From IMG/VR virus record IMGVR_UViG_3300020178_000002, positions 248,001 through 312,000 of that record: 64,000 nucleotides of DNA; one strand, given 5' to 3'. Position 1 is the first letter of the stretch. Every line of letters starts with the position of its first letter. The notes under the pieces are model-generated. The model saw only the letters and a list, made by a program, of their open reading frames with translations. It ran no database searches and had not been told where the DNA came from. Made by a program: the position numbers and the translations under genes. This document shows, piece after piece, positions 52,793 through 58,769 of the stretch.

Positions 52793-53100
52793 AGATTCTA
52801 AAAAGATATGAAATCCCTTTAGATGATGTAAACGAAATTATGATGAACATAGAGTCATACCAGAGAATGCTAAATTTTTATGGGGAGTGGGTGGAGAAGC
52901 ATGGGGAATATGATTATGTAGACGAGAGGGTTCGAGACCTATCTGGCATTCTCTGTGAGTATTTGATTGCAAGAGAATATGTAAAAGAGGGTGCGAGGAC
53001 ATTTGGTGATGATAAGACAGTTTATGCATCTGTTGAGTTGGAGTTTAAAAAGAAGTACCCAAATCTCGAATACCCTTTTTCAAAGGTTTCAGGCAAATGA
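52789..53100 (+). CDS. Hypothetical protein
   Basis: 103-aa ORF with overlapping start/stop on both sides. Confidence 0.55.
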   Translation: MKILKRYEIPLDDVNEIMMNIESYQRMLNFYGEWVEKHGEYDYVDERVRDLSGILCEYLIAREYVKEGARTFGDDKTVYASVELEFKKKYPNLEYPFSKVSGK

Positions 53101-53744
53101 TTATTACAATATTAAGAAAGCCTTTAGAGGGAAGCGTAGCTGATAATGTACTTAAACATGGTTGTGGTGCTTTAAACATAGATGCGTCAAGAGTTTCCTC
53201 TCACGACAAAACAAAAAACCACAGTCGCAAGCCAGAGGCTTCTAAACCAAAAGGCATTTATGGAGACTCAAAAGAACAAGAGACACATCAGACAAAGGGT
53301 CAAGAGATTGGTAGGTTTCCTGCTAACTTTATTCTGACTCACCGAGAGGGCTGTGAGTTAAAAGGCACTAAGAAAATTAAAAGTTCTTCTGGAAGAGGTG
53401 CTGTGAAAAAAGAGTCCTCTGCTGAAAAGTTGGGTAATCAAGGATATTCTTACTCTAAAGAGTCAAGAAAAGAAGGTACTGTTATGATTTGTCATGTAGA
53501 TGAAGATGGGAAAGAGACAGTAGCAGATTGGGCTTGTGTAGAGGGTTGTCCTGTTAAAGAGATAGATCGACAAAGTGGTTCGATAAAGAGTGGTGGTCGC
53601 TCTGCCAAAAACTACGCAGACAGCGATTCTGATCGGCTTGTCTATGGAGGGTTCTCTGGAGTGGCGAAAGAAATACAGCCCTCAAGTGGTGGTGCTTCTA
53701 GGTTCTTTAAACAGTTTAAGAAAGAAGAATCAAATGAACCCTAA
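53097..53744 (+). CDS. DNA methyltransferase middle subunit, copy 1
   Basis: RKPLEGSVADNVLKHGCGALNID...GRFPAN...GGASRFF, the central blocks of phage beta-class N4/N6 MTases. Confidence 0.75.
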   Translation: MIITILRKPLEGSVADNVLKHGCGALNIDASRVSSHDKTKNHSRKPEASKPKGIYGDSKEQETHQTKGQEIGRFPANFILTHREGCELKGTKKIKSSSGRGAVKKESSAEKLGNQGYSYSKESRKEGTVMICHVDEDGKETVADWACVEGCPVKEIDRQSGSIKSGGRSAKNYADSDSDRLVYGGFSGVAKEIQPSSGGASRFFKQFKKEESNEP

Positions 53745-54186
53745 GCATCTTTCTGTAAGAGTGAAGCAATGTGACCTCATAGCTTCAAACTCTCCCTGTC
53801 CAAGAAGAAAAGTAGGTGCTCTTATCATAGACCCAGATAACAATGTTGTTATTAGTGAGGGGTATAATGGTACTCCTAGAAGTTCTGATAAGCAGTATTG
53901 TGGTGGCTCTGTCTGTAGAAGGACAGAGGATAATATAAAGAGTGGTACTAGGAATGATGTTGGATGTCACCACGCTGAAATGAATGCAATACTAAATGCA
54001 ACTAGGGTAGGGCAGTCTACTCTAGGTAAATGGTTAATTGTAAACTGTGACCCTTGTCTCATGTGTGCAAAAGCAATTCACCACAGTGGGATAGTGAGAG
54101 TTTACTGTCCTAAAGAGTTCTCTGGGAATCATAAAGAAGGTCTAAAATATCTTCTTGAAAACAGTATTGAGGTAGAAGATTTATGA
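53734..54186 (+). CDS. dCMP deaminase
   Basis: CPRRKVGA, GYNG, HAEMNA and PCLMCAK; start MNPKHL. Confidence 0.9.
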   Translation: MNPKHLSVRVKQCDLIASNSPCPRRKVGALIIDPDNNVVISEGYNGTPRSSDKQYCGGSVCRRTEDNIKSGTRNDVGCHHAEMNAILNATRVGQSTLGKWLIVNCDPCLMCAKAIHHSGIVRVYCPKEFSGNHKEGLKYLLENSIEVEDL

Positions 54187-54302
54187 GTAAAGTAGTTATT
54201 TGCAAAAGATGTGGCAAAGACTTAAAATATGGCTGGAAATGTTCTGCAAGACCTGATTTGTCTTGTGTTCCTTATTCTAAATACTTAGAGGGTAAGCCAT
54301 GA
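54183..54302 (+). CDS. Small Cys4 peptide (39 aa), not in ORF track
   Basis: MSKVVICKRCGKDLKYGWKCSARPDLSCVPYSKYLEGKP*; ATGA overlaps at both ends. Confidence 0.5.
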   Translation: MSKVVICKRCGKDLKYGWKCSARPDLSCVPYSKYLEGKP

Positions 54303-54979
54303 GGGTAGTTTGTATTTCAGATACTCATAATCAGCATGATAAAATAGATCTTCCAGATGGGGATGTTTTAATCCATGCTGGTGATTGGACAGGTACAGGA
54401 ACTCAGAGACAAGTTATAAGCTTTATTCGCTGGTTTGCTAGTCAACCTCATAAGCATAAGATACTTATTGCAGGAAACCATGAAGTAACTATGGACACTG
54501 ATTTCTATAAGCAAGCATGGCCTTCTTTTCATAAGGAACAGCTTCCTTATCAAGATATTAAAGATTATGTCTTGAGAGAAGAAGATATTTTCTACTTAGA
54601 AAATAGTGAAGTTGTGATAGAGGGTGTTAAATTTTATGGGAGTCCTTATCAACCTGCTTTTGGTGGCTGGGCTTTTGGTGCTAATAGAGGATTTGAAACA
54701 AAGTCTACTTGGTCTAAGATACCAGAAGATACAGATGTTCTTATTACTCATGGACCACCTAAAGATATAGGAGATAGGTTAGAGATTGGTGACTGTGTTG
54801 GGTGTGAGGATCTTCTTTATAGGATAAGAGAAGTTAAACCCTCACTTCACATCTTTGGTCATATACATGAGGGGTATGGTGAATATAAAATTGGAGATAC
54901 TGTCTTTTTAAATGCTTCGATCTGTGATGAAAACTATAAGTTGACAAATAAACCTTTAGAATGGGAGTTGGATAAGTGA
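54299..54979 (+). CDS. Metallophosphoesterase (calcineurin-like, MPPED/239FB-type)
   Basis: CISDTH, HAGD, IAGNHE, LITHGPP and HIFGHIHE. Confidence 0.9.
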   Translation: MRVVCISDTHNQHDKIDLPDGDVLIHAGDWTGTGTQRQVISFIRWFASQPHKHKILIAGNHEVTMDTDFYKQAWPSFHKEQLPYQDIKDYVLREEDIFYLENSEVVIEGVKFYGSPYQPAFGGWAFGANRGFETKSTWSKIPEDTDVLITHGPPKDIGDRLEIGDCVGCEDLLYRIREVKPSLHIFGHIHEGYGEYKIGDTVFLNASICDENYKLTNKPLEWELDK

Positions 54980-55593
54980 TTATTACAATATTAAGAAAGC
55001 CTTTAGAGGGGAGTGTGGCAGATAATGTTTTAAAACATGGTTGTGGTGCATTGAATATAGATGCTTCTAGGATTAGTACCTCTGACAACCTCAATGGCGG
55101 AGCTTATGCTGAGTCTGCGAGTGAGAGACATGACGGAAAAGAGAACTGGAGGTATGAACGAGGTAAAGCAGGAGAGTATGAGCAACCGAAAGGCAGGTGG
55201 CCTGCTAACTTTATCCTCATGCATAAAGAGGGTTGTGAGTTAAAAGGAACTAAGAAAGTAAAGTCGAATGGTCATTGGACTCAAAAAGCAAATATTGGGA
55301 AGTTCTATGAGGGGGGTTGGAATCATCAAGAAATAGATGAGGGGAACAAGATGTCTGATGAAGATGGGAAAGAGGCTGTAGCAGATTGGGCTTGTGTAGA
55401 GGGTTGTCCTGTTCAGAGTTTAGATGCCCAAACAGGCATCTTGCGTAGTGGCAAAGATGTAAATCCAACAACTTCAAAAGTTAGTGGCTTTTTTGGTCAA
55501 ACAGATAACTACTATTCGGCAAAGTCGAATTATGGGGATAGCGGAGGTGCTTCTAGGTTCTTCAAGCAATTCAAGAAAGGAAATGAAAAATGA
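54976..55593 (+). CDS. DNA methyltransferase middle subunit, copy 2
   Basis: Same conserved blocks as copy 1 with different linkers; GTG start. Confidence 0.75.
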   Translation: MIITILRKPLEGSVADNVLKHGCGALNIDASRISTSDNLNGGAYAESASERHDGKENWRYERGKAGEYEQPKGRWPANFILMHKEGCELKGTKKVKSNGHWTQKANIGKFYEGGWNHQEIDEGNKMSDEDGKEAVADWACVEGCPVQSLDAQTGILRSGKDVNPTTSKVSGFFGQTDNYYSAKSNYGDSGGASRFFKQFKKGNEK

Positions 55594-56132
55594 TAGAGAT
55601 TAAAATAGGTGATTGCACCGAAAGACTAAAAGATTTAGAGGACAACTCAGTTGATGCTGTTATATCAGACCCTCCTTATGGGCTTAAATTTATGTCTAAG
55701 GGCTGGGATGATATAGGTGATGGCAGCCAGCAAAGAGAATGGCACAGAAAGTGGCTTACAGAGGCATACAGAGTTCTTAAGCCTAATGGAGTTATTAAAG
55801 CTTTCTCTGGGTCGAGAACTTTCCACCATCTGATAGCAATGATGGAAGAGATAGGGTTTGAAGACTTAAAAGTGGAGTCTTGGAGTTATGGTTCAGGTTT
55901 TCCTAAGTCTCACAATGTGAGCAAAGCGATAGATAAGTTAGGTGGTCGTCAATATAAGGCAATACCTGCTTCTGGTGTAGGGTTTATGAACTCAGATAAA
56001 GAGAACTGGAATGCTTGTCACAACCAACTCATTCCTGTCTCAGAAGAAACAGAAGAAGCTAAAGTTTGGAATGGTTGGGGTACGGCTCTTAAACCTTCAT
56101 GGGAGCCTGTCTGTGTTGGAGTTAAGAAATGA
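55590..56132 (+). CDS. DNA N4/N6 methyltransferase N-terminal (DPPY catalytic) subunit
   Basis: GDC...VDAVISDPPYG, RVLKP, WSYGSGFPKS and GWGTALKPSWEP; no SAM-binding motif I. Confidence 0.85.
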   Translation: MIEIKIGDCTERLKDLEDNSVDAVISDPPYGLKFMSKGWDDIGDGSQQREWHRKWLTEAYRVLKPNGVIKAFSGSRTFHHLIAMMEEIGFEDLKVESWSYGSGFPKSHNVSKAIDKLGGRQYKAIPASGVGFMNSDKENWNACHNQLIPVSEETEEAKVWNGWGTALKPSWEPVCVGVKK

Positions 56133-56734
56133 TTATTACAATATTAAGAAAGCCCCTAGAAGGGAGCGTAGCAGATAATGTGCTGAAACATGGATGTGGT
56201 GCTTTGAACATAGATGCCACTAGGATTGGTTTAGAGACTATGGTTTCTAGGTCTATGGGTAGTCTAGGGGTTATGCACGATGATAATTGGGAATCTAAAC
56301 CTATTGAAGCTAAAGAAGCCACAGGCAGGTGGCCTGCTAACTTTATCCTCATGCATAAAGAGGGTTGTGAGTTAAAAGGCTCTAAAAAAATTAAAGAGGG
56401 CAAAGCTAATAAAGATAAGGGTGGCTCATTTAGAGAAGTGGGTCTTTATGAAGATGGGTTGAAGACTAGAGCTGTAGACCATTTTCAAGGAGAAGAAGAG
56501 ATAGAAGATTGGGCTTGTGTAAAGGATTGTCCTATTAGGAAACTAGACCTGCAAAGTGGTCAAGTCAAAGGTTGGTCGAGTCAAAACCATAATACTTTTA
56601 ATCCATATCAAGGAAACTCGTTCCACAACTCGTCAACCCAAAGACAAGGATATAAAGAGGGGTATAACGATGATGGAGGGGCTTCTCGGTTCTTCAAGCA
56701 ATTTAAGAAAGGTAATGAAAAATGGAAGATATGA
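56129..56734 (+). CDS. DNA methyltransferase middle subunit, copy 3
   Basis: Same conserved blocks; lies in colinear position between the N and C subunits. Confidence 0.75.
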   Translation: MIITILRKPLEGSVADNVLKHGCGALNIDATRIGLETMVSRSMGSLGVMHDDNWESKPIEAKEATGRWPANFILMHKEGCELKGSKKIKEGKANKDKGGSFREVGLYEDGLKTRAVDHFQGEEEIEDWACVKDCPIRKLDLQSGQVKGWSSQNHNTFNPYQGNSFHNSSTQRQGYKEGYNDDGGASRFFKQFKKGNEKWKI

Positions 56735-57495
56735 TTGAGTATTTTAAAGTAATGATAACCCCACCTGTAGAAGAGCCTATTATCTTAGTAGGTAAGCCCT
56801 CTGAGATTGATTATACCAGCTTCATGGCTTTAGAGGGGGCTTCCATCGTTCCCATATATAACCCATCTGTACATGGGATCATTTTACTTGGAGAACCCAC
56901 AGAGGAAGAATCGAGTTTAATCAATGAGATTCTACTTCCAGGTGCTCATGTTATTCTTATCCCAGAAGATATTGGATATAAGGGTGTTATCTCCCTTGAA
57001 GACAAGGGTGGTTTAGAAGTTAGAGATGCCATTTTTGTAGCAGACGAGAACTCAGAGTTCTGCTATACTTCTAAAGCAAGTAGAGGTGAGCGAGAAGCAG
57101 GTCTTTCTAACTTCGATGAGAAAGAGGGTCATGGTACATTTAGGGCAACTAGAGATCAAGCTATGCTAACAGGTTCTGGTAATGTTAGGGACAACAAGCG
57201 TAAGAATATCCATCCTACTGTTAAGCCAATAGAGATAATGGAATGGTGTGCTAGAGATATAGAACCTAGCTCTACTGTTGTAGACCCTTTTATGGGGTCT
57301 GGAACAACAGGTATCGCTATGTCTAAACTACACCATGACTTTGTAGGGATAGAGCTTAATCCTGAATATGCTAAAATATGTGAGGCGAGGATGAAGTATT
57401 GGAAACCTGTGGACACAAAGATTATTTCAGAGAACCCTGTCGAAGAAGAAGACCAACAGGTCTTCACAGGGCAAGTTTCTCTATTTGACTTTTAG
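56722..57495 (+). CDS. DNA methyltransferase C-terminal (SAM-binding) subunit
   Basis: FCYTSKASxxERxxGL, NIHPTVKP, VVDPFMGSGTTG and FVGIELNPEY. Confidence 0.85.
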   Translation: MEDMIEYFKVMITPPVEEPIILVGKPSEIDYTSFMALEGASIVPIYNPSVHGIILLGEPTEEESSLINEILLPGAHVILIPEDIGYKGVISLEDKGGLEVRDAIFVADENSEFCYTSKASRGEREAGLSNFDEKEGHGTFRATRDQAMLTGSGNVRDNKRKNIHPTVKPIEIMEWCARDIEPSSTVVDPFMGSGTTGIAMSKLHHDFVGIELNPEYAKICEARMKYWKPVDTKIISENPVEEEDQQVFTGQVSLFDF

Positions 57496-58769
57496 TAGAG
57501 GTTACGCTCAAAACGTGCAGCTACTCTTTCTGCTAGCATTTCTTCTTGAGATGCTTTGCGAAGCAGGAGCTTCTTCACAGATCGACCAAGACTCATATCC
57601 ATCTTTGTGGCTCTGTCGGTCTTTATTCCTCTTAGGTTAACCTTTGTGAGGTCAACACCTGTAAGGTCAGCACCATGTAGAGTAGCACCTGTAAGGTCAG
57701 CACCAGAAAGGTCTACATTTCTAAGATCAGTTCCTGTCAGATCAGCATCTTTTAGAGTAGCACCTTTTAAAGATTTTGCCTTTGAAAGGTCAGCATACTC
57801 TAGGCTAGCACCAGAAAGGTCAGCACCAGAAAGATCAGATCTTTCAAAGTCAGCACCAGAAAGGTCAGCTCCTTTTAAAGATGTTCCTGAGAATACAACT
57901 TCTGTAAAGTCACAATTAGAGAGATTAGCTCTGTCAAGAACAGCAGCACTAAAGTCTGACCCTGTAAAGTCTACACCAATAGCTTTGCAACCAGAAAAAT
58001 CAGCACCATTGAACTTGGTGTTCTTTACATCAGAAGCATCAGCAAATTTCCCTCCCACATACTTAATGCCTGCAAGATTGCATCTTGTAAAGGTTGTTCC
58101 TTCTAGACCATCTTCGTCAGTAATGGTGATGCCTTTTAAGTGGGTTGAAATTAGAGTAGAGTCTTTAAAAGAAGCTATTTCATCTACTCCTGTAAATTTA
58201 ACTCCTGTTAAAATGTTGTCTTGGAACTCTACACCTAAGAGATTAGCACTTGTAAAGTCTGTGGCAGTTATACCATCTGCGTTTGTAAAATCAGCACCGA
58301 TTAAAGTAGCTTTTGTAAAATCTGTTCCAGTTAAGCAACTTAGTTGTAAGTTAGCACCTGTTAGGTTAGCACCTTTAAAGTCACTACCTTTTAGATTTGC
58401 ACCTTCAAAATCAGCTCTGAGTAGTTTAAACCCAGCAAAGTTTGATAGCTCAATCTCGGATTCTTGGAAATTTGTGTGGCTCAGATCATTTTTCGGAATA
58501 CCAAGGCTAGTAAAGTCTGTCTGGTTGAAGTTTATTTCAGAAAGATCTTTATTCTTCAGTACTCCAGCCACAGATTTAATGTCGTCAGGATAGCTGTTTA
58601 AGTATTCTTTGACTTTACCGCCTTCGAGAGCTTTTTGATAAGCTTCATCTTTTTCTCGGAATTCTTTTAGCTCTTTGCCTTGAAGAGCTGGTTCAGCAGC
58701 ATACATTCTCTCCATATATGCTTTTCTTTTCATTCTCATACGAGCTTCGTAATATGATCTTCTTCTCAT
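57492..58769 (-). CDS. Pentapeptide-repeat protein with basic terminal tags
   Basis: Long ADLSG/ANLTG runs; N-terminus KRKAY, C-terminus RKASQEEMLAERVAARF. Confidence 0.9.
   Translation of the reverse strand: MRRRSYYEARMRMKRKAYMERMYAAEPALQGKELKEFREKDEAYQKALEGGKVKEYLNSYPDDIKSVAGVLKNKDLSEINFNQTDFTSLGIPKNDLSHTNFQESEIELSNFAGFKLLRADFEGANLKGSDFKGANLTGANLQLSCLTGTDFTKATLIGADFTNADGITATDFTSANLLGVEFQDNILTGVKFTGVDEIASFKDSTLISTHLKGITITDEDGLEGTTFTRCNLAGIKYVGGKFADASDVKNTKFNGADFSGCKAIGVDFTGSDFSAAVLDRANLSNCDFTEVVFSGTSLKGADLSGADFERSDLSGADLSGASLEYADLSKAKSLKGATLKDADLTGTDLRNVDLSGADLTGATLHGADLTGVDLTKVNLRGIKTDRATKMDMSLGRSVKKLLLRKASQEEMLAERVAARFERNLY

What the first reader, a model, noticed from the sequence alone, without database searches (positions are those of the whole stretch)
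56722..57060. The SAM-binding subunit carries a catalytically dead copy of the N-terminal half
Seen: its first ~110 aa echo the N subunit. SVHGIILLGEP aligns with SVDAVISDPP, EILLPGAHVILI with RVLKPNGVIKAF, and LEDKGGLEVRDAIF with MEEIGFED (family consensus IEDAGFEIRD), but DPPY is lost. Established: beta-class MTases work as dimers, and METTL3/METTL14 is an active/inactive pair. Inference: gene duplication followed by complementary loss produced an obligate heteromer, with one chain supplying DPPY and the other motif I.
Basis: partly seen in the sequence, partly recalled or inferred. Interest (0 to 1): 0.65.

Follow-up and report, generated by a model that had tools for sequence, protein, structure and literature searches.

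The report
Split phage methylase with dead half-domain
A 312-kb marine phage encodes a DNA methyltransferase as separate catalytic, DNA-recognition and cofactor-binding genes, and the cofactor-binding protein carries a conserved, inactive extra domain resembling the catalytic piece that seems to help hold the parts together.

Summary
Residues 1-120 of the 257-aa ORF at 56722-57495 ('dom') form a compact domain. BLASTP, Pfam and PDB sequence searches find nothing for dom. All 50 best structural matches to the dom model are class I SAM methyltransferases, at middling Z (5.5-7.1). DPPY is replaced by a conserved GxPT, and dN/dS is about 0.1, so dom is functional rather than decaying.

The enzyme is split three ways into N half, TRD and dom-C, with three TRD paralogues here. 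All genes have overlapping stop and start codons. A complex model (ipSAE 0.85, best control 0.01) pairs the strand before DPPY in N with the strand before FMGSG in the C half. Dom therefore does not occupy the N-half position. Strand 112-118 lies against the opposite edge of N.

Dom also occurs in single-chain relatives that keep a live N half, so it is an accessory domain and not a leftover of reciprocal loss. TRD genes are mosaics that reassort between related phages. No activity was measured.

The parts
56722..57081 (+). dom: residues 1-120 of the dom-C protein, a degenerate N-half-like mini-Rossmann domain. GEPT at residues 57-60 (nt 56890-56901) replaces DPPY.
   Evidence: hhalign A5 vs A4 gives 93.5%, E 2.4e-7. 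AF2 model of dom alone has pLDDT 87.4 and pTM 0.78. All 50 top VIA rows are class I SAM MTases, Z 5.5-7.1. No Pfam, PHROG or PDB sequence hit. dN/dS 0.09-0.15.
57082..57198 (+). Variable linker (residues 121-159), with low confidence over residues 138-156 and length-variable among relatives.
   Evidence: pLDDT below 50 for residues 138-156. Indel-rich in the family alignment. dN/dS is higher here, 0.2-0.46.
57199..57495 (+). C half: motif X (HPTVKP, residues 164-169), motif I (FMGSG, residues 190-194; nt 57289-57303), motif II region and a C-terminal tail.
   Evidence: PF01555 positions 154-219, 57.5 bits against a cut-off of 26.7. PDB profile hits to M.BceJIV, CcrM and HpyAVI. VIA Z 6.3-6.9 to CcrM, RsrI, M.BceJIV and M1.HpyAVI over model residues 100-238.
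55590..56132 (+). N subunit (180 aa): motif IV DPPY (residues 27-30; nt 55668-55679) through beta7 (EPVCVGVKK). It has no motif I.
   Evidence: PF01555 positions 1-96, 54.7 bits. 2173 stand-alone relatives of ~180-195 aa. Predicted to bind dom-C.
56129..56734 (+). TRD3 (201 aa): target-recognition-type middle module. It starts MIITILRKPLEG...NID and ends GGASRFFKQFKK.
   Evidence: Aligns to residues 165-345 of the single-chain phage methylase P0002. No Pfam hit. phrog_3008 hit. ATGA overlap with the N gene and a 13-nt overlap with dom-C.
54976..55593 (+). TRD2 (205 aa), paralogue of TRD3.
   Evidence: 52% identity to TRD3. GTGA and ATGA overlaps with the flanking genes. Mosaic sub-modules.
53097..53744 (+). 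TRD1 (215 aa), a third paralogue. It is separated from the others by a dCMP deaminase gene and a metallophosphoesterase gene.
   Evidence: 49% identity to TRD3. TRD HMM E 2e-70.

Best explanation
The locus encodes a modular, multi-subunit beta-class DNA amino-methyltransferase of a 312-kb phage. It is probably N6-adenine specific because motif IV is DPPY.

The catalytic Rossmann fold is assembled in trans. The 180-aa N subunit brings beta4 with DPPY through beta7. The C half of the 257-aa protein brings motif X, the FMGSG SAM loop and beta2. Separate TRD proteins, three here, supply DNA recognition.

Residues 1-120 of the 257-aa protein ('dom') are a diverged, catalytically dead, N-half-like mini-Rossmann domain. 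Dom does not substitute for the live N half. Its last strand (residues 112-118, FCYTSKAS) pairs with the free beta6 edge of the N subunit. The dom-C protein therefore grips N from both sides of N's sheet and stabilises the split enzyme.

Shown here:
- the gene layout
- the motif content of each protein
- the profile similarity of dom to the N half
- purifying selection on dom
- wide conservation of the split form

Predicted only: the heteromer and its interface.

Inferred:
- the brace role of dom
- adenine specificity
- protection of phage DNA from host restriction at several motifs
For: - Layout and overlapping stop/start codons.
- Pfam halves are complementary: N covers positions 1-96 and C covers 154-219.
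- Single-chain relatives P0002 and P0003 contain N, TRD and C colinearly.
- Complex model: ipSAE 0.83, 0.85 and 0.86 against a best control of 0.01. Runs agree in at least 82% of contacts and partner pLDDT is at least 69. That mark was reached by 58 of 80 solved complexes and 2 of 110 mismatched pairs.
- The tightest contacts are C 185-189 with N 22-25 and C 207-211 with N 3-6. Dom residues 84-118 touch N at 93-102 and 167-174.
- Dom resembles the N half: hhalign 93.5%.
- Dom has a methylase-like fold.
- Dom always lies directly upstream of the C half in 148 representatives, including chains that also contain a live N half.
- dN/dS for dom is 0.09-0.15, similar to the C half.
- GxPT is conserved at the motif IV position.
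- Related contigs carry 2-3 N genes and 3-4 TRD genes with one or two dom-C genes.
Against: - No activity, binding or methylation data exist.
- The complex score may simply reflect the model reassembling a known fold from its two halves. It says nothing about affinity.
- I could not inspect coordinates. The strand pairing at the dom/N edge is read from the pattern of contact residues.
- Dom similarity to the N half rests on one profile comparison in which a single motif (RVLKPGG) carries much of the score; block-shuffled controls reached 39.4 of 47.0.
- Structural Z scores of 5.5-7.1 are in the range the tool calls middling.
- Where the TRD subunits dock was not tested.
Confidence: 0.6

Rival explanations
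1. Hard-wired division of labour. N plus the C half form a TRD-less catalytic protomer. Dom plus a TRD protein form a second, recognition-only pseudo-protomer. The TRD's own beta7-like first strand (IITILRKP) plugs into dom's sheet. This would mimic the homodimer that beta-class enzymes need, with exchangeable TRD cassettes.
For: - Beta-class enzymes work as dimers in which one subunit recognises DNA and the other catalyses (review PMC7544214).
- The beta7-like strand and the post-TRD strand are each present twice: N ends EPVCVGVKK and TRD starts IITILRKP; TRD ends SRFFKQFKK and dom ends FCYTSKAS.
- Both copies of each are kept in tandem in the single-chain relatives P0251 and P0377.
- TRD-dom-C fusions are the commonest architecture.
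Against:
- In the N + dom-C model, dom's hairpin is already engaged with N.
- P0339 has three TRDs in one chain but only one dom.
Confidence: 0.25
2. Dom is an unrelated small Rossmann-like adaptor domain. Its likeness to the N half is convergence on a common alpha/beta pattern and on the LKPGG motif that many class I methyltransferases share.
For: - No Pfam, PHROG or PDB sequence hit for dom alone.
- Foldseek finds nothing below E 0.09.
- Block-shuffled controls keep up to 39.4 of the 47.0 hhalign score.
- VIA Z is only 5.5-7.1.
Against: - The real hhalign score exceeds all 30 shuffles, and the alignment is colinear over three motifs.
- The dom HMM cross-hits true N halves in register in four proteins.
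- The whole protein is colinear with the small full-length beta-class enzyme M1.HpyAVI from the LEDxGF segment onward.
- All 50 top structural neighbours among 48,161 chains are SAM methyltransferases.
Confidence: 0.12
3. The small ORFs are debris of decaying methylase genes. The dom-C protein is either a self-contained inactive fold completed in cis by dom, or a pseudogene.
For: - Junction duplications look like truncation scars.
- A relative shows a deletion scar: its dCMP deaminase starts with 13 residues of an N half.
Against: - 489 dom-C and 2173 N relatives were found, most of those listed similar in length to the query.
- dN/dS is about 0.1.
- Stop and start codons overlap between the genes.
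- The AF2 monomer does not place dom in the canonical position: TM to full beta-class structures is ~0.25.
- The complex model puts N next to the FMGSG strand.
Confidence: 0.03

Closest known systems
Single-chain phage beta-class methylases of the PP9W2 / Touem01 type (P0002, P0003; annotated adenine-specific methyltransferase)
   Same: They have the same N-half, TRD (kPl.GtvaaNvl..GtGalNID ... GRWPAN ... RFFY) and C-half motifs, in the same order.
   Different: They are one polypeptide with no dom. The beta7 strand and the post-TRD strand each occur once. Here there are three or more genes, plus dom, and both strands are duplicated.
METTL3-METTL14 and ciliate MTA1-MTA9 (active/inactive beta-class pairs)
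   Same: An active DPPW/DPPY partner is combined with a partner whose motif IV is eroded (EPPL in METTL14; review PMC7544214). Here motif IV is GxPT.
   Different: In those pairs both partners are complete methylase folds. Here the dead unit is a ~115-aa mini-fold fused to the SAM-binding half, and the active fold is itself split across two chains.
M.EcoP15I Mod2 and CcrM homodimers (division of labour)
   Same: They are beta-class enzymes that need a second subunit for DNA recognition (PMC7544214). The C half matches CcrM by sequence and fold.
   Different: Those are homodimers of identical full-length chains. Here the subunits are distinct genes.
Two-polypeptide cytosine-C5 methylases such as M.AquI (recalled from memory, not checked here)
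   Same: A methylase fold is divided between two separately translated chains.
   Different: A different class (C5, not amino) and a different split point. They have no dead domain and no separate TRD genes.
Multispecific C5 methylases of Bacillus phages and mosaic HsdS of Type I systems
   Same: Several exchangeable target-recognising modules serve one catalytic core (cited in PMC7544214, refs 86-87). The relative P0339 has three TRDs in tandem.
   Different: Those are C5 enzymes with their TRDs inside one chain, or Type I specificity subunits. Here the TRDs are free-standing genes of a beta-class amino-methylase.

Membership tests
Beta-class N6/N4 amino-methyltransferase (Pfam PF01555 N6_N4_Mtase) | Motif IV (D/S)PP(Y/F/W) | tested here: met
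   N ORF has DPPY at residues 27-30, and it is 50/50 in the N family. Dom has GEPT instead, so this is met by the N chain only.
Beta-class N6/N4 amino-methyltransferase (Pfam PF01555 N6_N4_Mtase) | Motif I FxGxG SAM loop preceded by motif X | tested here: met
   dom-C has HPTVKP at residues 164-169 and FMGSG at 190-194, invariant in 83 relatives. The N chain lacks both.
Beta-class N6/N4 amino-methyltransferase (Pfam PF01555 N6_N4_Mtase) | Motif order IV...TRD...X-I (beta permutation) | tested here: met
   Gene order is N, TRD3, dom-C. The single-chain relatives P0002, P0251 and P0377 are colinear. Some relatives are permuted to dom-C-N.
Beta-class N6/N4 amino-methyltransferase (Pfam PF01555 N6_N4_Mtase) | Score above Pfam gathering threshold | tested here: met
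   N scores 54.7 bits and dom-C 57.5 bits against a cut-off of 26.7. Each covers only half of the model.
Beta-class N6/N4 amino-methyltransferase (Pfam PF01555 N6_N4_Mtase) | SAM-dependent methylation of DNA adenine N6 or cytosine N4 | not testable with these tools
   No assay or methylome data. Adenine specificity is inferred from DPPY and from the annotations of relatives.
Dom as a copy of the beta-class N half | Significant colinear profile similarity to N halves | tested here: met
   hhalign 93.5%, E 2.4e-7, 66 columns. The score exceeds the reversed profile and all 30 block shuffles. Pairwise and narrow-profile tests failed.
Dom as a copy of the beta-class N half | Takes the beta4-beta7 position next to the motif I strand | tested here: not met
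   In the complex model, N residues 22-25 pair with C residues 185-189, not dom. The monomer model does not superpose on whole beta-class chains (TM ~0.25, rmsd ~19 A).
Pseudo-enzyme partner of the METTL14 type | Complete methylase fold with eroded motif IV that heterodimerises with the active subunit | tested here: inconclusive
   Motif IV is eroded and contact with the active N chain is predicted. However, dom is only ~115 aa, with four strands and four helices when modelled alone. No binding was measured.
Split (multi-polypeptide) methyltransferase | Neither chain has both motif I and motif IV, and the chains assemble | tested here: met
   Motif content. Assembly is predicted only (ipSAE 0.85 against a control of 0.01). 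Activity of single chains was not tested.

The most novel reading that the evidence does not exclude
A beta-class methylase has turned its obligatory homodimer into a hard-wired asymmetric machine. N plus the C half form a TRD-less catalytic protomer. Dom (a dead N half) plus a free-standing TRD form a recognition-only pseudo-protomer. Mosaic TRD genes and alternative N genes plug into one dom-C scaffold to give a phage many methylation specificities from few genes.
Probability: 0.25. Interest if true: 0.8.

Novelty: new variant of a known kind. Interest (0 to 1): 0.62.

Why it matters
Beta-class amino-methyltransferases, from CcrM to METTL3-14, are thought to need a second subunit, and why is still debated. 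This appears to be a natural, widespread system, mostly in marine and other metagenomic phage contigs, with 210 representative clusters carrying dom. In it the fold, the recognition module and a dead half-domain are separate, exchangeable parts.

If the parts assemble as predicted, three things follow:
- It offers a ready-made system for testing which part of a beta-class enzyme does what.
- It suggests how phages multiply their anti-restriction methylation specificities by shuffling small genes.
- It gives a name to a domain (dom) that no Pfam or PHROG family currently covers.

Tried and rejected
- BLASTP of the N ORF against the dom-C ORF gave nothing (E 0.43 or worse).
- hhalign with profiles from close relatives only gave 17-23% probability.
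- Pfam on 28 dom sequences at E up to 10 gave no methylase family.
- PDB sequence searches with the two dom profiles returned only designed proteins and chance hits.
- Foldseek with the dom model found nothing below E 0.09.
- I considered that residues 1-45 (MIEYFKVMITPP...ILVGKPSE) are a degenerate motif X plus motif I. hhalign against the C half gives E 0.46, so sequence does not support it. Structure aligners do place helix 2-12 and strand 21-24 at the alphaZ/beta1 positions of ordinary class I methylases. The origin of residues 1-31 stays open.
- I considered frameshifting or read-through joining the ORFs. It was rejected because each junction has a clean overlapping stop and start, stand-alone homologues are abundant, and the junction strands are duplicated rather than continuous.
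- blastn of the locus against the phage collection found no match.
- Three literature searches found no description of a split beta-class enzyme with such a domain. The library is incomplete, so this is weak evidence of novelty.

Full report
**Context.** The window is bases 248001-312000 of a 312,136-bp virus record with direct terminal repeats, that is, a jumbo phage. The region around the finding holds a co-oriented gene array on the + strand:

| Gene | Coordinates | Size |
|---|---|---|
| TRD1 | 53097-53744 | 215 aa |
| dCMP deaminase | ends 54186 | |
| metallophosphoesterase | 54299-54979 | 226 aa |
| TRD2 | 54976-55593 | 205 aa |
| N half | 55590-56132 | 180 aa |
| TRD3 | 56129-56734 | 201 aa |
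| ORF of the finding (dom-C) | 56722-57495 | 257 aa |

A pentapeptide-repeat protein follows on the opposite strand. The methylase genes overlap by GTGA, ATGA or 13 nt, which suggests translational coupling.

**What the pieces are.** Pfam PF01555 (N6_N4_Mtase) matches the 180-aa ORF only over profile positions 1-96, which include DPPY at residues 27-30. It matches the 257-aa ORF only over positions 154-219, at residues 156-220, which include HPTVKP and FMGSG. The three TRD ORFs have no Pfam match. All start MIITILRKPLEGSVADNVLKHGCGALNID and end GGASRFFKQFKK. They align to the middle of the single-chain phage methylases P0002 and P0003 (462 and 442 aa), which contain N, TRD and C colinearly. 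The locus is therefore a beta-class amino-methylase split into at least three polypeptides, with three alternative middle modules.

**Checking the observation.** Pairwise BLASTP of the N ORF against the 257-aa ORF is not significant. Profiles built from close relatives gave only a 13-60 column hit at the LKPG motif, with probability 17-23%. Residues 1-120 ('dom') have no Pfam, PHROG or PDB sequence match.

I then searched 1.84 billion representative proteins with a dom profile and found 210 proteins at E of 1e-3 or better. A diverse alignment of 104 of these dom segments (A5) compared with the N-half family (A4) gives hhalign probability 93.5%, E 2.4e-7, over 66 columns.

Controls temper this result. 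The reversed N profile scores 13. The C-half and TRD profiles score about 10. Thirty shuffles of the N profile in 8-column blocks reach at most 39.4, against 47.0 for the real profile. One motif (RVLKPGG) therefore carries much of the signal, but the colinear flanks add to it.

Three further observations agree:
- The whole-protein profile aligns to M1.HpyAVI continuously from LEDkGFEVRD (HpyAVI residue 95) through motif I.
- A tblastn match to a Staphylococcus phage methylase starts at residue 77.
- The dom HMM weakly cross-hits true N halves, in register, in four proteins.

I regard the observation as confirmed at profile level.

**Structure.** The AF2 model of the whole protein has pLDDT 77.7. 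Its elements are H2-12, E21-24, H31-35, E50-55, H61-70, E71-79, H86-94, E102-106 and E113-117, then a low-confidence stretch (residues 138-156), then H170-179, E185-188, H195-202, E206-209 and H214-227. It does not superpose as a whole on beta-class enzymes (TM ~0.25, rmsd ~19 A). Residues 100-238 match C halves of CcrM, RsrI, M.BceJIV and M1.HpyAVI (Z 6.3-6.9). Residues 1-104 match ordinary class I methylases (Z up to 7.4).

Dom folded alone is confident (pLDDT 87.4, pTM 0.78). In a Foldseek-independent search of 48,161 chains, all 50 best rows are class I SAM methyltransferases, with Z 5.5-7.1 and 90-105 residues aligned. The ESM Atlas gives the same picture. The Z values are middling by the tool's own standard. 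The uniformity of the list is the stronger argument.

**Is dom decaying?** It is not.
- The family alignment has many invariant positions in dom.
- The motif IV position is a conserved GxPT (G 93/104, P 80/104, T 63/104) and never DPPY, while the N family has DPPY in 50 of 50 sequences.
- dN/dS against three relatives is 0.15, 0.14 and 0.085 for dom. For the C half it is 0, 0.11 and 0.07.

**How the parts fit.** A complex prediction of dom-C with the N ORF, using my own alignments, scored ipSAE 0.83, 0.85 and 0.86 against a best control of 0.01. The runs share at least 82% of contacts and partner pLDDT is at least 69. In the tool's calibration, 58 of 80 solved complexes and 2 of 110 mismatched pairs reached the mark. 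The tool also warns that a pass for a known fold may reflect memory.

The tightest contacts are C 185-189 (the strand before FMGSG) with N 22-25 (the strand before DPPY), and C 207-211 with N 3-6. The catalytic sheet is thus completed in trans by the live N subunit, not in cis by dom.

Dom residues 84-90, 100-107 and 112-118 also touch N, at residues 93-102 and 167-174, which are N's beta6 and beta7. The contiguous contact runs 112-118 and 93-100 suggest that strand FCYTSKAS pairs with N's free edge strand. This is my reading of the contact list, because I could not inspect coordinates. In the dom-only model residues 97-120 have no regular structure, which fits a strand that needs a partner.

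**Comparative evidence against simple complementary loss.** An HMM census of 148 dom-bearing representatives gave these architectures:

| Architecture | Count |
|---|---|
| TRD-dom-C | 72 (54, plus 18 in which the TRD appears as two HMM hits) |
| dom-C | 47 |
| dom-C-N | 5 |
| N-TRD-dom-C (P0251, P0377) | 2 |
| TRD-dom-C-N (P0281) | 1 |
| three TRDs then dom-C (P0339) | 1 |

Smaller classes (dom alone, TRD-dom, and forms with a doubled C-half hit) make up the remaining 20.

Dom therefore always sits directly before the C half and coexists with a live N half in the same chain. The single chains keep both beta7-like strands in tandem (EPVIVCRKE ... HLIYIGRKPLSE) and both post-TRD strands. The junction duplications seen between the window's ORFs are therefore part of the design and not truncation scars.

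Stand-alone N halves (2173 hits) and dom-C proteins (489 hits) are abundant in metagenomes, many of them marine.

**Modularity.** Related contigs differ in their module content:

| Contig | Module order |
|---|---|
| 369-kb contig (L007) | TRD-N-N-TRD-TRD-TRD-N-domC |
| close relative with 96%-identical dom-C (L009) | TRD-N-TRD-N-TRD-domC-domC |
| L011 | TRD-N-TRD-domC |

TRD genes are mosaics of three variable sub-modules that reassort between these phages.

**Comparison with what is known.** [quoted passage not shown] The present system differs in four ways:
- The active fold is itself split.
- The dead unit is a mini-fold fused to the SAM half.
- Recognition modules are separate genes.
- Three literature searches found no description of such an arrangement, although the library is incomplete.

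PHROGs already lists stand-alone N halves (phrog_6025) and TRD-plus-C forms (phrog_3008) as DNA methyltransferases, but nothing for dom.

**Verdict.** The heteromer idea is supported by prediction only. The duplication-and-complementary-loss story is replaced by a three-part split enzyme with a conserved, dead, N-half-like accessory domain. Its most likely role is to brace the live N subunit, and possibly to carry the TRD. The TRD docking site, the enzyme's activity and its sequence specificities remain untested.

Noticed in passing
window 53097-53744, 54976-55593, 56129-56734; L009:3374-6000; L007:1041-4351: TRD genes are mosaics of three variable sub-modules: V1 between NID and GRWPANF, V2 an optional Cys-rich insert, and V3 between LDxQSG and GGASRFF. 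These reassort between related phages. For example, window TRD3 combines V1+V2 of the L009 195-aa TRD with V3 of the L009 165-aa and L007 151-aa TRDs.
   Followed up: partly
L009:2087-2584: In the close relative, the dCMP deaminase ORF begins with MIEIKIGDCTERL, the first 13 residues of an N half, and TRD1 is absent. This looks like a recombination or deletion scar inside the array.
   Followed up: no
window ~55220-55420 (TRD2) and the equivalent parts of TRD1 and TRD3: The TRDs contain a four-cysteine pattern (GCEL ... DWACVEGCP) that could bind a metal. It is missing from the short TRDs of relatives.
   Followed up: no
window 57492-58769 (-): A 425-aa pentapeptide-repeat protein converges on dom-C and overlaps its end by 4 nt. 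It is also next to dom-C in L009. Some pentapeptide-repeat proteins mimic DNA, so a link to restriction evasion is conceivable but untested.
   Followed up: no
G000:C1 75151-75852, 75951-76655, 95814-96443; L023:937-1950 (just upstream of the window): The phage has three more complete PF01555 methylases. It also has a 337-aa enzyme with motif I before SPPY, a different permutation class. The genome invests heavily in DNA methylation.
   Followed up: partly
L001:1366-1935 (Staphylococcus phage StAP1): The annotated 189-aa 'adenine-specific methyltransferase' P0001 has motif I but no DPPY. It may be another split or truncated beta-class enzyme.
   Followed up: no
P0250, P0256, P0262, P0246, P0247, P0281: Natural single chains occur in the order dom-C-N. 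Here the beta-class halves are fused in the opposite (motif I before motif IV) order, a natural circular permutation within one family.
   Followed up: partly
window 53590-54979: A dCMP deaminase gene and a calcineurin-like phosphoesterase gene sit inside the methylase array, between TRD1 and TRD2. They are translationally coupled to TRD2.
   Followed up: no
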